NCBI RefSeq assembly: GCF_031769215.1
Contig: NW_026782081.1
Location: 2,604,001-2,668,000, forward strand
Direction of reading: 5' to 3'
DNA from: Ylistrum balloti
Taxonomy: Eukaryota
DNA: 64,000 nt
This document shows positions 29,380 to 63,835 of this stretch, piece after piece. Every line of letters starts with the position of its first letter. The first letter of the stretch is position 1. A program made the position numbers and the translations under genes. The notes beneath the pieces are model-generated. The model saw nothing but the letters and a program-made list of their open reading frames with translations, made no database searches and was not told where the DNA came from.

Positions 29380-32300
29380 CTATTGAACCTTTGTTTTGTT
29401 CGTGGCTTTTGGTCGCCCGAAACCTCCGAATATATCCTCTGCGTACTCTCTGTCCGGTCTGTCCAGTGTGTCATGTAGCCAATCAAACAGGTAGGAGTTG
29501 AAACCGAAGTTCACATGAAAATACCTAGAAATAGCATTCGATCATTTGGATATTTACGAGTATCACCGAAGAATGGTCAATAACAAACACCTGTATAATG
29601 GAAATTTGTTATCATTCGCCTAACACTTCGTTGAAATGTTTATTTAAATGTGATATTCAAATATTTTTAAACAGCTCGTGTGTTTCTATTTCAGTATATG
29701 GATTCTTCATCAATATATGTTTCTGCAACAATACTGACTTTGCTAGCATAGGAACCAATGTCATAACTCTCTCTAGCTTAATGAAATTATTGAGTGTATA
29801 AAAATCAACTTATTAATTTCCACAAGGTTTATATTTTTCGGATATTCGGACATGAACAAAACTTACTTGTGATGGTTGTCATGGAATTGTGATGGCGGTT
29901 GCCATGGCCAAAACGCATTCATCTTGACACCTGAGTGATCCATTAGGCCGTAGTAATACGTATACAATAAAACGGGAACATACACAGCTGAAACACAAAT
30001 GAGACAGCTCACAGCAACGTAACAATACACGAACTTAACGGTATAGTTGGCATTTCAATGTCTAATGGCGCACGAGACACGAACTATTTGGAGTTTTATA
30101 TGTCTTGAGTAAAGCCAGATCTGAATTATTGAGTGATTTTCAAATCAGTCATGAAAGAAATACAGAGTTTGTCATCATATTCTTGAAAGAAAGAGGATAC
30201 ACTAGAGAAGAGGAAGAAAGGACTGAGTGTCAGTCAGTCGGGAAAATGTCTTGTTTGGTACTTGTTGGTAAGGAACTAAGCAGAACACATCAAACATTTC
30301 AAATAAGGGTATCTTAGCCCCTTAACATTTCCCAAAACTACAATAATGTCGATATAAACAAATAAAAAAATAAACAACAAGAAAATATCATCATGTCAAC
30401 GTAATCATAATTCAAACGAAATCTGTGTAAACAAAAAACAAAAGAAAGATTCACAGAGATACTCATGAAAAAGCACAAGAAGAATGAGAACACGTGTTCC
30501 GGAAGATTAATGCTTCATCGACGACATTAGTCTAGTAAATCTTGGTCAATCCAAGTAAGTTACGTCATGTTCCCAAATGAGAACAAGGTGTAAAACAACG
30601 GAACTAACAGGCAAACTACCGAGCAGCAAACGCGTTTAGTTGACAACACCTTGCTAGGTAGAGTTTTGTTTTAATTCTGATCGTTCATTACTTGTCAAAA
30701 GCTGTAACTCGAGCTAACTTGGGCGGTAGTTGTGGGGGTAACAATACCTATGTGAATATTACAATATATATCCTCTCAGTAATAAGGTAGTAATGTTTTA
30801 ATCTTACTTCGAATAACCATCGCTATGAATTGAAGTAATTAGTGATACGAATGTTACCAGTATGTTAATTAACAAATTATACACACCAAATTTATTCAAT
30901 GTATGGTTATTTAATTTATACAAAATTGCCGAACGTTATTTCGTGAAAGAACGAGATGAAATAACATTAATTCACGGCAACACGCTTTTAGATATCGCTT
31001 GTTAGCTGTCCAAGATGTACCAACTACAGTGAGATTGCATTTCACTAAAACAACCGGTTAATATCGAATGTACTTATGATTTCTATGTCAGATTTGCCAT
31101 TCAGAAATGTTACTGCAGCTTCTGCAATTCTATTAACATGTGGTACATACATCCTGACAGAAATACTGACAGCTATCCGTATGGTGTTTTTCAGATATTG
31201 TACTGTCTAATGATGAAACAATGAGAGCATTAGAAATAGATTTATCGCATTCGGTAAGAAGTTTCCTTCAGACAACAGTACAAAGTTACACTTCAGGAAA
31301 GCATGTTCTATGTCTGATTCTCATGTCAAGGTCTTTGGGTGCTTTTTTTCTGTTTCGAGTATTTTGATAAAAACTTGTTAACATATTCATATACAAACAA
31401 AAATCAAATAGTTTCCATGTTTCGTTCGTGAGCAGTTATCATTCTCATTGCAAAATACACAAAAACAGACACAGCAAGTTATAGAACTTCATGAACATTT
31501 CATGTATGATTGGATGTTTATGTCTTTAAAGAACAGAGGATACACATGGTGTATTTACCTGGGTGGATAGGCACCATGAAAGGAATGGCGGCTAAGTATC
31601 CCTGGTAAAGTACAAACTCTGCCGGGTGCATGGCTACGGCAGAGAATGCTGTAGGCTGATGGTAGCGGTGGTGAACCTTGTGGATGTGTCTGTACAAGAA
31701 AGGGTAATGAAACAGACGGTGGAGGTAGTAGGCTAGACAGTCGTTGTATAGGAACATTGCAAACGCAGAGAAGGGCAGATAACTCCATCCGTAGTCTGAA
31801 AGTCCGTAGTACATCTTGCTGTAGCCTATGAAGACAGATATATATATGATTATAAATTTGTTATGTAAATGGCGTATCATGAAAATGCCTTATATCAAAC
31901 ACTTGGCGACGGGCAATTTGCAATTGAAAGTTAAAACATTTAGTGTGCTCTATCTCTAAATAGTAAATGGTTGCCTTTGTACATATAAGTCGTGTATATT
32001 TCAAGATCACACATTTAACCACTTGTAGAAGAAATCCATTATGATGTAATAAACTATGAGGAGATATGACCTCCATTTGATATATAGCAGGCAATTATTC
32101 CAGACACCAAAGAACCAAACAGCATGTTGGCTGATCCAAGCAGAATCTCGTGTCTTTCGTTCGCTGGAGTCAAAAACTTGTTTGGTTGGCACTTCCACTC
32201 GTGGGCCTGTGTAAAAATACGATATGTACTTAAACCGTAATGGAGAGGCAACTTGAATATAAAAGCTGAACATAGTTTCAGTAGATAAAAAAGACAGGAT

Positions 32301-44876: not shown

Positions 44877-47800
44877 TTAGGATGTTTTAGGTTTACCGTG
44901 ACCACCGAATATATCCTCCGCGTACTCTCTGTCTGGCTTGTCCATGGTGTCATGTAGCCAGTCAAATAGGTACGAGTTCAAACCGAAGTTTACATGAAAA
45001 TATCTGAAAACAGCATTTACAATTTTCCGTATTGAAAGCTTATAACACTAAGATTGTTGAAATAATGCTAATTTTAGATTATGTGAAATAATTTATAAAT
45101 ACCGAAGCTTCTATCGTCAACGAGTTACTCGACACTGTCGACATTAGATATGATCATCGGACACAAGAAACAAAATATTTTACTACATTATGGAATATGT
45201 GCTGTTTTATAGGTAAAGTAGGTAAGAAGAAACCAAAAAACAAAATCCTTTACAAAAGAGGTATATAATATCAGATACAAGACTTCTTACTTGTGGTGGT
45301 TGTCATGGAATATCGAAGAGGGTTGCCATGGCCAAAAAGCATCCATCTTGATCCCCGAATGATCAAGCATTCCATAGTAATAGCTATATAGCAGCATAGA
45401 GATATAGATGGCTGAAACACAACGAAGTCCAATGCTTAAAAAATATACCTTAAACTTTTCATTAATTTCTAGAATTTAATTGTAAGGTTGATTACATGTA
45501 TCGTAAAGAATATACAATAAGGTCTGAAGTTTCACAATGTACAACGGAATGATTTTAGAATTCCTGTCAATATATTAAAATCAACCGTGAAATACTTGAT
45601 GCATATCTAGGTATTTTCCAATCCCGATTCTCGCTGTTCGATTTTTCATGTACGCGGAAACGACAGGCTTAAACAAGTATCCTTCACACGAAAAGGGAGA
45701 CAACTTGAACACAGAACAGCAGAAACAAGCTGGAGAAGGAAGGTAGCTGGAACACAAAAAACGCAGGCACAGAAGTTAGCAGGAAGTAAGCAGAAACAAG
45801 CAGGAGAAGGAAGGTAGCTGGAACACAGAAAACACAGTCACAGGAGTTAGCAGAAACAAGCTGGAGAAGGAAGGTAGCTGGAATACAGAAAACGCAGTCA
45901 CAGGAGGTAGCAGAAACAAGCAGGAGAAGGAAGGTAGCTGGAACACAGAAAACGCAGTCACAGGAGGTAGCAGAAACAAGCTGGAGAAGGAAGGTAGCTG
46001 GAACACAGAAAACACAGTCACAGGAGGTAGCAGAAACAAGCAGGAGAAGGAAGGTAGCTGGAACACAGAAAACACAGTCACAGGAGTTAGCAGAAACAAG
46101 CTGGAGAAGGAAGGTAGCTGGAACACAGAAAACGCAGTCACAGGAGGTAGCAGAAACAAGCAGGAGAAGGAAGGTAGCTGGAACACAGAAAACACATTCA
46201 AAGGAGGTAGCCGAAACAAGCAGGAGAAGGAAGGTAGCTGGAACACAGAAAACGCAGTCACAGGAGTTAGCAGAAACAAGCTGGAGAATGCAAGTAGCTG
46301 GAACACAGAAAATGCAGCAACAAGAGTTAGCAGAAACATACAGAAAATTTCACTACTAAACGTAAGGGAAGACGAAAAAGACGTAAGAAGGATCAATAAC
46401 GTGAAAGCTCAAATAGGTAATATTTGGAGAATATCAGTGGATATATATATAACTAATCACAGTACCTTAAGAAATATTAAGAAATGTCAATAACAGAAGA
46501 TCTTTTTTCTTTTCAGGATTAAAGCTTTTAAAAGATGACTGAACAACATTGTTGACAGAAAAAAGTATAAAGATCATTGCGCTTGACAAATGCTTAATCA
46601 TTTTTCACGGTATTGTCACACCGATACATAAATAGATGTAACTTAAAGATGCTTTGTGTATCGATTAAATAGTTGAAAAAAATAAAAGCAACATGACAAA
46701 TGTATTCCGCTAACGTTTTCAGGCCTAACTGCCATCTTCAGGCGATACATTTATATTTCATTCACGTAAAATCAGGAACACAACTTTCCTGGACAATAGA
46801 TGTATCGCCTCAAGATGGCCGTTAGGCCTGAAAACGTTACCGGAATACATTTGTTGTGTTGATTTTAATTTTTTTTTCAAATATACATATATATATATAA
46901 GGATGTGTGCCTATTATTTCTTATAAAGATAGTTTGATACCTGGATGGATGGGGACCATGAAAGGAACGATAGCCATGTATCCCTGGTATAAGATAAACT
47001 CCACTGGGTGCATGGCTGTAGCAGAGAATGCTGTGGGCTGATGGTAGCGATGGTGCACCTTGTGGATGTGTCTGTACAGAAAAGGGATATGGAGCATGCG
47101 ATGGATGTAGTACATCGCGCAGTCGCTGTATATGTACAGTGCAAATGCTGAGAGGGGCAGATAACTCCAGCCGTACTCAGAAAATCCATAATACATCTTA
47201 CTGTAACCTGTAAGGATAATAAGGATAAGTGTACAAAGCAATTAATTAATTCATTGTGATATAGGTACTGGCTAATTAATGTGTGCAGGTTGATCAATAA
47301 GATGCACTTCAGAATTATCATCTTCATGGCGTTTCAAATATAGAATATAAGTCATAGAAAAGGAAATTTCTTACACATTTAAAAAGAATTAAATTCAAAG
47401 AATCATTTTATTATATGCATGATTATAATGACCAGTTTTATGCCAAATCAGGAACTTTTGGTACCTTCCATGTAAGAGATGATAATGTTTTTTGACGGAA
47501 GGTGACGAAGGATCCTTTGCTATAAACCGGAAAATAGCTGAACAGGTAATGACATCTGCGCTTATCTCGATTGGTCAAAATATAATAATAAATAATCTAG
47601 TATTAAGATTATTTGAATTATTCAAAACTGCAAGTGCACTTTCATTTCCAGTTTGGAATATTTGAAAGGACAGTCTGTAGATCAATATATTTTCTACCTA
47701 TCAAAGGTCAGAAGTTCACATCTAGAACTATTATTCAGTTCCAGCGACCCCACTATTTAAGACGGATGCAGTTTGTCGGTCTTGCGCTTTGTTTTACACG

Positions 47801-57704: not shown

Positions 57705-63835
<6,131 letters not shown>

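What the first reader, a model, noticed from the sequence alone, without database searches (positions are those of the whole stretch)
46673..46880. Fold-back architecture that may lock the ribozyme with its own antisense arm
Seen: the two arms are hammerhead copies in opposite orientation with complementary lesions (left has an intact core and weaker helix II; right has a perfect helix II but a CUCAAGA core and a helix I mismatch). In the host pre-mRNA the antisense arm is transcribed first, ~60 nt after the donor, and can pair with the ribozyme over ~55-75 bp. Inference: a self-silenced ribozyme MITE tolerated inside introns, which might be a conditional switch (ADAR editing, helicases, temperature) or a dsRNA/siRNA source. 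I know of no description of this exact element, but cannot search to confirm novelty.
Basis: partly seen in the sequence, partly recalled or inferred. Interest (0 to 1): 0.75.

Follow-up and report, generated by a model that had tools for sequence, protein, structure and literature searches.

The report
Inverted Penelope-element tails carrying hammerheads
The 208-bp fold-back is two truncated 3' ends of a Penelope-like retrotransposon, each with that family's usual hammerhead-ribozyme motif, inserted head-to-head in a scallop gene intron; this is the ordinary insertion scar of such elements, not a new ribozyme switch.

Summary
Arms 46676-46754 and 46796-46874 are 90% complementary. The left arm, read on the minus strand (the host gene's strand), has an intact hammerhead core, CUGAAGA...GAAA...A17. 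The right arm has G5>C and G1.1>C.

The interpretation mostly fails. Each arm is one copy of an ~85-nt unit found at least 74 times in this Ylistrum balloti genome. That unit is the 3' tail of a Penelope-like element (PLE): longer copies run upstream into a GIY-YIG endonuclease ORF whose full-length homologues are RT + GIY-YIG proteins.

Of 70 independent loci, 22 carry an adjacent inverted partner. All 22 are head-to-head, none tail-to-tail, and the junctions differ. In at least 19 of the 22, only one arm carries the 37-nt "tail". These are published hallmarks of PLE integration.

The 40-nt spacer is unique in the genome, so this is not a MITE family.

The hammerhead has a 1-bp helix III with a palindromic ACGU loop. 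Published work shows this class to be poorly active or inactive as a single copy. The hairpin is predicted to beat the ribozyme fold by ~59 kcal/mol, but there is probably little activity to lock.

No RNA data exist for this species. One other first-reader note in this genome (s1-268604) describes a similar Penelope fold-back on other DNA.

The parts
46624..46634 (.). Left flank ATACATAAATA. It may be a target-site duplication or the remnant of a (TA)n-like target.
   Evidence: It matches ATACATATATA at 46883-46893 (repeat D4). Most family copies are flanked by (TA)n.
46635..46671 (-). 37-nt 'tail', the optional 3' extension of the left copy (sense: CTATTTAATCGATACACAAAGCATCTTTAAGTTACATC).
   Evidence: It aligns to reference positions 84-120 of tailed copies (L126). 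It is present in 39 of 99 copy ends and absent in 46. The CGATACACAAAG motif is also kept in sister lineages.
46672..46754 (-). Left copy of the PLE 3'-terminal unit, in the sense orientation of the host gene.
   Evidence: It is 94% identical to the reference copy over positions 1-130, and 93-95% identical to solo copies.
46698..46752 (-). Hammerhead motif with an intact core: C3-A9 at 46741-46735, G12-A14 at 46720-46718, A15.1 at 46717, ACGU loop at 46716-46713, U16.1 at 46712, A17 at 46711. Cleavage is predicted between 46711 and 46710.
   Evidence: Read directly from the sequence. It has one mismatch to the family core. Helices I and II covary across lineages.
46755..46794 (.). Junction spacer of about 40 nt between the two truncated 5' ends. 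It contains a small CAGGAA/UUCCUG hairpin.
   Evidence: It is unique in the genome at up to 3 mismatches. It has no similarity to PLE upstream sequence beyond shuffled controls.
46795..46880 (+). Right copy of the PLE 3'-terminal unit, without a tail. Its hammerhead (about 46800-46852) is degenerate, with G5>C at 46811 and G1.1>C at 46840.
   Evidence: It is 88% identical to the reference over positions 0-86 and has 2 mismatches to the 36-nt core.
46881..46904 (.). Right flank, (TA)n-like, including ATACATATATA at 46883-46893.
46942..47208 (-). Host exon of an FA_hydroxylase family gene (His boxes HRMLH and HKVHH). The donor GT is at 46941-46940.
   Evidence: Pfam PF04116, E = 5.4e-14. It is 100% identical to LOC132548185 of Ylistrum balloti. 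DNA homology with the paralogue stops at 46938.
45291..45411 (-). Next host exon (...MLDHSGIKMDAFWPWQPSSIFHDNHH). It defines a phase-1 intron of about 1.53 kb that holds the fold-back.
   Evidence: It is 75% identical to paralogue 29862-29998. It has a cag| acceptor and a |gtaaga donor, and the frame is kept across 46942|45411.

Best explanation
The fold-back is the scar of a Penelope-like element (PLE) integration into a (TA)n-like site in an intron of a fatty-acid-hydroxylase-family gene of the scallop Ylistrum balloti.

Two heavily 5'-truncated copies of the element's 3' end lie head-to-head, with their 3' ends facing outward. One has the 37-nt tail and one does not. They are joined by about 40 nt of filler.

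This is most likely the product of one event in which both strands of the cut target primed reverse transcription. That step is inferred from the family-wide pattern and from published in-vitro work.

Each copy carries the hammerhead that this PLE lineage keeps about 110-165 nt downstream of its GIY-YIG ORF.

The hammerhead is the metazoan type-I, dimer-dependent kind: a 1-bp helix III capped by a palindromic ACGU loop. A single sense copy in the host pre-mRNA is therefore expected to cleave poorly or not at all. It is in addition sequestered in a 79-bp hairpin of about -112 kcal/mol. Both points are predictions.

The locus most likely has no evolved function. At most it is a generic intronic dsRNA hairpin.
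For: 1. Family membership. The arm is a dispersed unit: at least 100 BLAST matches (capped) and 74 core matches against 0 in the control.

2. PLE link.
- Longer copies extend at least 420 nt upstream into an ORF remnant with CxxC...YIGQTG...R...H motifs, whose stop lies about 165 nt before the hammerhead.
- Sister-lineage ORFs give GIY-YIG hits at 16-20 bits.
- Their homologues pass the Pfam threshold.
- Full-length homologues of 700-820 aa have RVT_1 plus a C-terminal GIY-YIG.
- YLDD and FDVISLYTNIP motifs lie upstream.

3. Hammerhead conservation. Copies found through the protein alone (EN about 64% identical) keep CUGAAGAU...UGAAAACGUUA while the flanks are unalignable. Compensatory changes occur: helix I G-C 16 / A-U 6 and helix II G-C 23 / A-U 3. 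85.9% of cells are paired, against 16-42% when the partner is slid.

4. Architecture.
- 22 of 70 independent loci have an inverted partner within 60 nt. All are head-to-head, 0 are tail-to-tail, and the junctions vary.
- In at least 19 of the 22, exactly one arm has the tail.
- This matches PMC8557442 (inverted 5'-truncated copy; 30-40 bp tail often at one end only; microsatellite bias; HHR in pLTRs) and PMC11167929 (both strands cleaved and extended; the tail is the sequence between two RT start sites).

5. Energetics. The hairpin ensemble is -113.5 kcal/mol and the HHR-constrained ensemble -54.5 kcal/mol.

6. Dimer dependence of this HHR class: PMC4209133 and PMC7229834.
Against: - No intact full-length PLE of the arm's own lineage was recovered. 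RT evidence in that lineage is only motif-level, and Pfam finds nothing on the fragments.
- Rfam hammerhead models do not hit the motif.
- The arms differ at 8 of 79 positions and the spacer is the longest among the fold-backs. Two separate insertions at a hot spot therefore cannot be excluded for this one locus.
- About half of all copies start within 5 nt of the same position. This could mean a short non-autonomous derivative rather than random 5' truncation.
- No RNA data or cleavage assay exists, so inactivity of the lone ribozyme is inferred from other species' ribozymes.
Confidence: 0.85

Rival explanations
1. The fold-back is a self-silenced ribozyme module. The antisense arm keeps an otherwise active intronic hammerhead locked, and unlocking by ADAR, helicases or temperature would cleave the pre-mRNA as a conditional switch.
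For: The sense arm has an intact core and the antisense arm is transcribed first. The hairpin is far more stable than the ribozyme fold.
Against: - The arrangement is explained by PLE integration mechanics and recurs with arbitrary truncation points. This is the only one of the 22 head-to-head loci whose two arms each hold a whole hammerhead.
- The ribozyme class needs a second sense copy to build helix III (PMC4209133, PMC7229834).
- Helix II of the sense arm is already damaged.
- The spacer and junction are unique to this locus.
- 59 kcal/mol is far beyond what a few A-to-I edits could offset.
Confidence: 0.03
2. It is a MITE or fold-back DNA transposon whose terminal inverted repeats happen to contain hammerhead sequences, and it has amplified as a unit.
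For: It is compact (about 250 bp), has long inverted arms and AT-rich flanks with a possible 11-bp duplication. Several other fold-backs exist in the genome.
Against: - Most copies are solo arms: 48 of 70 loci.
- Fold-backs have different junctions.
- The spacer is unique.
- The same-junction copies L081, L100 and L105 share 86-97% identical flanks, so they are one duplicated locus.
- The arms continue upstream into a retroelement ORF in longer copies.
Confidence: 0.02
3. Two independent insertions of PLE 3' fragments landed by chance in opposite orientation in the same (TA)n hot spot, rather than arising in one double-primed event.
For: The arms are only 90% identical. The left arm is 94% and the right arm 88% identical to the reference copy. 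A unique 40-nt spacer lies between them. (TA)n is a strongly preferred target.
Against: - Family-wide, adjacent inverted pairs are 22 head-to-head against 0 tail-to-tail. Independent hits would give both.
- The one-tail-per-pair asymmetry holds at this locus too.
- The flanks look like one duplicated target.
Confidence: 0.1
4. The arms are monomers of a short non-autonomous derivative (a non-LTR retrozyme or SINE-like mini-PLE of about 90-135 nt) mobilised by PLE enzymes. They are not truncated copies of the autonomous element.
For: 35 of 99 copy 5' ends fall within +/-5 nt of the same position. Tandem arrays occur with a 148-bp period. A 2026 preprint derives animal retrozymes from PLE pLTRs (10.64898/2026.07.22.740005).
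Against: - A continuum of longer copies reaches into the ORF.
- The common 5' end lies in TATAATAAAT, which could simply favour microhomology joining to (TA)n targets (inference).
- The 148-bp array has a dead core, CUGAGA.
- No circRNA evidence is available.
Confidence: 0.25

Closest known systems
Complex tandem/inverted insertions of Penelope-like elements (Evgen'ev & Arkhipova 2005; Arkhipova 2006; Craig et al. 2021, PMC8557442; Frangieh et al. 2024, PMC11167929)
   Same: High 5' truncation. An inverted 5'-truncated copy abutting the 5' end. A 30-40 bp tail at only one end. Microsatellite (TA)n targets. A hammerhead in the terminal repeat. A GIY-YIG ORF upstream.
   Different: Here both copies are truncated to about 85-120 nt, so nothing but the ribozyme-bearing tails remains. 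The junction carries about 40 nt of filler. This scallop lineage itself has, to my knowledge, not been described.
Metazoan type-I / PLE hammerheads with minimal helix III (Cervera & de la Pena 2014, PMC4209133; newt and axolotl satellite HHRs, PMC7229834)
   Same: The CUGANGA and GAAA cores. A 1-bp helix III capped by a palindromic tetraloop (ACGU), implying dimeric action. A U.U at the base of helix II, as reported for axolotl HHR_Amex2. Location in PLE terminal sequence.
   Different: Helix I has 3 bp + a 2-nt bulge + 8 bp. No Rfam model scores it. Activity is untested.
Non-LTR retrozymes (Cervera & de la Pena 2020, PMC7229834; Li et al. 2026 preprint)
   Same: Short, AT-rich, HHR-bearing repeats related to PLE pLTRs. 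Monomers are common, including in introns (about 44% of Xenopus copies overlap introns).
   Different: This locus is an inverted pair, not a direct tandem, so it cannot give unit-length RNA by double cleavage. The one tandem array seen (148 bp) has a broken core.
L1 'twin priming' inversions and inverted Alu pairs in introns (my own knowledge, not checked here)
   Same: A single retrotransposition event yields two segments in opposite orientation. Intronic inverted repeats form long dsRNA that ADAR can edit.
   Different: A different retroelement class and enzyme. Editing was not examined because no RNA data exist.
MITEs
   Same: Small size, inverted arms, AT-rich target.
   Different: There is no amplified unit with fixed termini and interior. 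The arms derive from a retroelement 3' end.

Membership tests
Hammerhead ribozyme (type I, metazoan/PLE class) | Catalytic core C3-U4-G5-A6-N7-G8-A9 | tested here: met
   The left arm on the minus strand reads CUGAAGA (46741-46735). The right arm reads CUCAAGA, so it fails (G5>C)..
Hammerhead ribozyme (type I, metazoan/PLE class) | G12-A13-A14, an A15.1-U16.1 pair, and H17 (not G) at the cleavage site | tested here: met
   GAA-A-ACGU-U-A|G in both arms. The A-U pair is kept in 27 of 27 aligned copies, though those copies were selected by a pattern that includes it.
Hammerhead ribozyme (type I, metazoan/PLE class) | Helices I and II supported by compensatory changes | tested here: met
   Pair 13-50 is GC 16 / AU 6. 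Pair 23-37 is GC 23 / AU 3. 85.9% of cells are paired, against 16-42% for slid controls. This reflects only two or three independent events across lineages, so support is moderate.
Hammerhead ribozyme (type I, metazoan/PLE class) | Score above threshold with curated covariance models (Rfam Hammerhead_1/3/II/HH9/HH10) | tested here: not met
   No hit at gathering threshold on the window, nor at E<=10 on 451 nt or on the isolated 73-nt arm. PMC4209133 reports that PLE min-HHRs need relaxed descriptors.
Hammerhead ribozyme (type I, metazoan/PLE class) | Self-cleavage | not testable with these tools
Penelope-like element (canonical EN+) | C-terminal GIY-YIG endonuclease ORF | tested here: met
   The ORF remnant upstream of the arm family has CxxC...YIGQTG motifs. 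Sister-lineage ORFs score 16-20 bits to PF01541. Homologues at E = 1e-56 and 1e-36 score 24.8-34 bits, above the 22.6 cut-off.
Penelope-like element (canonical EN+) | Reverse transcriptase N-terminal to the EN in the same ORF | tested here: inconclusive
   Full-length homologues (698-817 aa) have RVT_1 + GIY-YIG. In this genome only degraded fragments with YLDD and FDVISLYTNIP motifs were seen, and Pfam finds nothing on them.
Penelope-like element (canonical EN+) | Hammerhead motif in the terminal (pLTR/3') sequence | tested here: met
   The HHR lies about 110-165 nt after the EN stop codon in three or more lineages.
Penelope-like element (canonical EN+) | Frequent 5' truncation, with an inverted 5'-truncated copy abutting the 5' end | tested here: met
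   5' ends range from below -400 to above +60. 22 of 70 loci are head-to-head and 0 are tail-to-tail.
Penelope-like element (canonical EN+) | Optional 30-40 bp tail, often at one end only | tested here: met
   There are two 3' ends 37 nt apart (46 copy ends without the tail, 39 with it). Exactly one tailed arm occurs in at least 19 of 22 inverted pairs, including this one.
MITE | An amplified unit with fixed terminal inverted repeats and a shared interior | tested here: not met
   The spacer is unique. Junctions differ. Same-junction copies share their flanks.
Non-LTR retrozyme | Direct tandem repeats, each with an HHR, expressed as unit-length or circular RNA | tested here: not met
   This locus is an inverted pair. 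A 148-bp tandem array exists elsewhere (C180) but with the core CUGAGA. RNA was not testable.

The most novel reading that the evidence does not exclude
The inverted partner that PLE integration so often creates (about 31% of loci here) may systematically mask the element's hammerhead by antisense pairing in read-through host transcripts. That would make genic insertions harmless and turn them into dsRNA (ADAR or siRNA) sources. This would be a built-in, general consequence of PLE double priming that has not been discussed, with this locus as its clearest case because both arms hold a whole ribozyme.
Probability: 0.05. Interest if true: 0.4.

Novelty: new member of a known kind. Interest (0 to 1): 0.15.

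Why it matters
It matters little beyond annotation. It shows that a striking "ribozyme with its own antisense" is the expected by-product of Penelope-like element integration, so similar fold-backs in invertebrate introns should not be read as switches.

One modest point has value. In this family every inverted pair is head-to-head and carries the tail on only one arm. This is genomic support, from a mollusc, for the model in which both target strands prime reverse transcription from two start sites (Frangieh et al. 2024).

It also flags an HHR-bearing canonical PLE lineage in a scallop, and a probably truncated NCBI gene model.

Tried and rejected
- Rfam at gathering and E-value thresholds on the window, on 451 nt and on the isolated arm gave no hammerhead hit. 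Only spurious miRNA-type matches appeared, caused by the long hairpin.
- Pfam found nothing on the 108-aa EN remnant of the arm's own lineage or on short RT fragments. The link was made through longer sister-lineage ORFs and their homologues instead.
- The RNA-seq search found only one non-RNA run, kept as contigs. Its contigs break in the repeat, and the one long contig laid on unique sequence is about 95% identical to the window. This said nothing about expression, editing, cleavage or an empty site.
- The spacer showed no similarity to PLE upstream sequence beyond shuffles and has no other genomic copy.
- The paralogous gene copy was tried as an empty-site control. Its intron is too diverged to align.
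- The invariance of core columns in alignment A1 was discarded as evidence, because those copies were picked with a pattern that contains the core. The protein-anchored copies were used instead.
- No consensus of the element was built. Natural copies served as reference.
Full report
**The observation.** Arms 46676-46754 and 46796-46874 are 79 nt long and 90% complementary, about 40 nt apart. The minus-strand RNA folds into one long hairpin: -125 kcal/mol for 326 nt, against -58 +/- 4.9 for shuffles, z = -13.75.

Read on the minus strand, the left arm is AAAUGUAUCGC / CUGAAGA / U-GGCA-GUUA-GGCC-U / GAA / A-ACGU-U / A | GCG-GA-AUACAUUU. This is a type-I hammerhead layout with an intact core. Its one lesion relative to the family is C>A at the top of helix II.

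The right arm, read on the plus strand, has CUCAAGA (G5>C) and CCGG in place of GCGG (G1.1>C), with a perfect helix II.

**The host gene.**
- The exon 46942-47208 on the minus strand encodes part of a fatty-acid-hydroxylase-family protein (PF04116, E = 5.4e-14). It is 100% identical to LOC132548185 of the scallop Ylistrum balloti.
- DNA homology with a paralogue elsewhere in the window stops at 46938, and GTATCA follows 46942.
- A further exon at 45411-45291 carries the third histidine box (HDNHH). It is conserved in the paralogue and joins in frame.
- The deposited protein model reads through this donor to a stop at about 46924, and no RNA data exist to settle the matter.

**What the arms are.** The 208-bp query has at least 100 matches in the 648-Mb genome (capped). 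Most of them cover a single arm of about 82 nt. The 36-nt core with up to 3 mismatches occurs 74 times, against 0 for the reversed control. A looser core pattern occurs 116 times against 0.

Longer copies share at least 420 nt upstream of the unit. That sequence is the degraded end of an ORF with ...LIYVIVCPTCQ.HYIGQTGNALSERVRVHKQQIRTPETRKIPLSEHLDICGKG...KPALNAS*. It ends about 165 nt before the hammerhead.

- Pfam does not score that 108-aa remnant.
- Longer ORFs of sister lineages (about 64% identical) hit GIY-YIG at 16-20 bits.
- Their database homologues pass the threshold at 24.8-34 bits.
- Full-length homologues of 698-817 aa carry RVT_1 followed by a C-terminal GIY-YIG.
- YLDD and FDVISLYTNIP motifs lie upstream in genomic copies.

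RT plus C-terminal GIY-YIG is the defining architecture of canonical Penelope-like elements (PMC8557442, PMC4209133).

**Is the hammerhead real?** Rfam does not recognise it. Copies retrieved through the endonuclease protein alone, and so without bias towards the ribozyme, keep CUGAAGAU...UGAAAACGUUA about 110-165 nt after the ORF in at least three lineages, while the surrounding 3' sequence is unalignable.

The helices covary. The second pair of helix I is G-C in 16 copies and A-U in 6. The first pair of helix II is G-C in 23 and A-U in 3. Overall 85.9% of cells pair, against 16-42% when the partner is slid.

Helix III is a single A-U pair capped by the palindromic tetraloop ACGU. A U.U sits at the base of helix II. 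Both features are described for newt and axolotl hammerheads and for PLE hammerheads. Those ribozymes are weakly active or inactive as single motifs and work as dimers, in which two copies form an extended helix III (PMC4209133, PMC7229834). I accept the motif as a member of that class on sequence, covariation and context. Activity is untested.

**Why a fold-back?** I fetched 72 loci holding the core and mapped each to natural reference copies. Three of them are one duplicated locus (flanks 86-97% identical), which leaves 70 independent loci.

- 22 of the 70 have an inverted partner within 60 nt. All 22 are head-to-head (5' ends facing) and none is tail-to-tail. The truncation points differ.
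- The unit has two alternative 3' ends 37 nt apart (46 ends without the tail, 39 with it). In at least 19 of the 22 inverted pairs exactly one arm has the extension, including this locus: the left arm is tailed (46635-46671) and the right arm is not.
- Most copies sit in (TA)n.

These are the published signatures of PLE integration. [quoted passage not shown] The purified Anolis PLE protein cleaves and extends both target strands and starts reverse transcription at two sites that bracket the tail (PMC11167929).

The window's geometry fits one double-primed event. The 3' ends face outward against similar flanks (ATACATAAATA and ATACATATATA). The truncated 5' ends face inward. About 40 nt of filler lies between them. 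That filler is unique in the genome and unrelated to the element. That it was a single event is inference.

**The lock.** With nearest-neighbour energies the hairpin ensemble of the 211-nt fold-back is -113.5 kcal/mol. Forcing the hammerhead helices gives -54.5 kcal/mol, a gap of about 59 kcal/mol. The ribozyme fold would therefore not be populated.

This is a by-product. A lone sense copy of a dimer-type hammerhead, with a weakened helix II, is expected to be nearly inert anyway.

The MITE idea fails on three counts: the unique spacer, the variable junctions, and the shared flanks of the only same-junction copies.

Editing or small-RNA production from the 79-bp hairpin is possible, as for any intronic inverted repeat, but could not be examined.

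**Novelty.** Both the kind of element and the kind of scar are known. The scallop lineage is a new member. The all-head-to-head, one-tail-per-pair statistics are a small genomic corroboration of the two-start-site, two-strand model.

Another first-reader note in this genome (s1-268604) describes a "fold-back Penelope mini-insert with twin hammerheads" on other DNA. It agrees with my reading, which I had reached independently.

- No N stretches were filled.
- Read laying was given 1,201 letters.
- The host's spliced coding sequence was checked exon by exon only, and the joined model was not searched.

Noticed in passing
window 45780-46338: A 60-bp minisatellite, 9.3 copies at 93% identity, lies in the same intron. 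It creates a spurious 206-aa ORF on the minus strand.
   Followed up: partly
window 46921-47241 and 45291-45411; paralogue at 29862-32218: The deposited 149-aa model LOC132548185 reads through a conserved GT donor at 46941 and stops at about 46924. A downstream exon with the HDNHH box exists and is conserved in a tandem paralogue, so the model looks truncated.
   Followed up: partly
G000:C101:2307406-2307969: A cluster of at least 10 identical hammerhead cores of a sister lineage (GGCC-GCGA-GGCC), with 41-nt and 82- or 123-nt spacing. It is a very short-period tandem array of ribozyme cores.
   Followed up: no
L012 1388-2036 (G000:C180:~61030-61680): A 148-bp tandem array of 4.4 copies at 98% identity, made of the unit plus tail but with a one-base deletion in the core (CUGAGA). 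It ends in a palindromic junction inside helix II.
   Followed up: partly
L005:1583-2683 (-), query positions 534-670: An unrelated repeat of about 136 nt next to a PLE copy has at least 30 genomic copies at 95-99% identity. It looks like a very young SINE or MITE.
   Followed up: no
70 family loci (L055-L126): 35 of 99 copy 5' ends fall within +/-5 nt of one position, just before helix I and inside TATAATAAAT. This could reflect microhomology joining to (TA)n targets or a short non-autonomous derivative.
   Followed up: partly
G000:C85:2669619-2669813; C230:1027434-1027539; C476:328894-328985; C181:14542-15245: Sister PLE lineages also show head-to-head pairs in which both arms keep an exact hammerhead core. 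All are ordered minus then plus.
   Followed up: no
window 46309-46668 vs run X1: The only public run holding this region gives a contig with 10 substitutions and 7 gaps over 353 nt. It probably comes from a different individual or a close relative, and it ends at the repeat.
   Followed up: no
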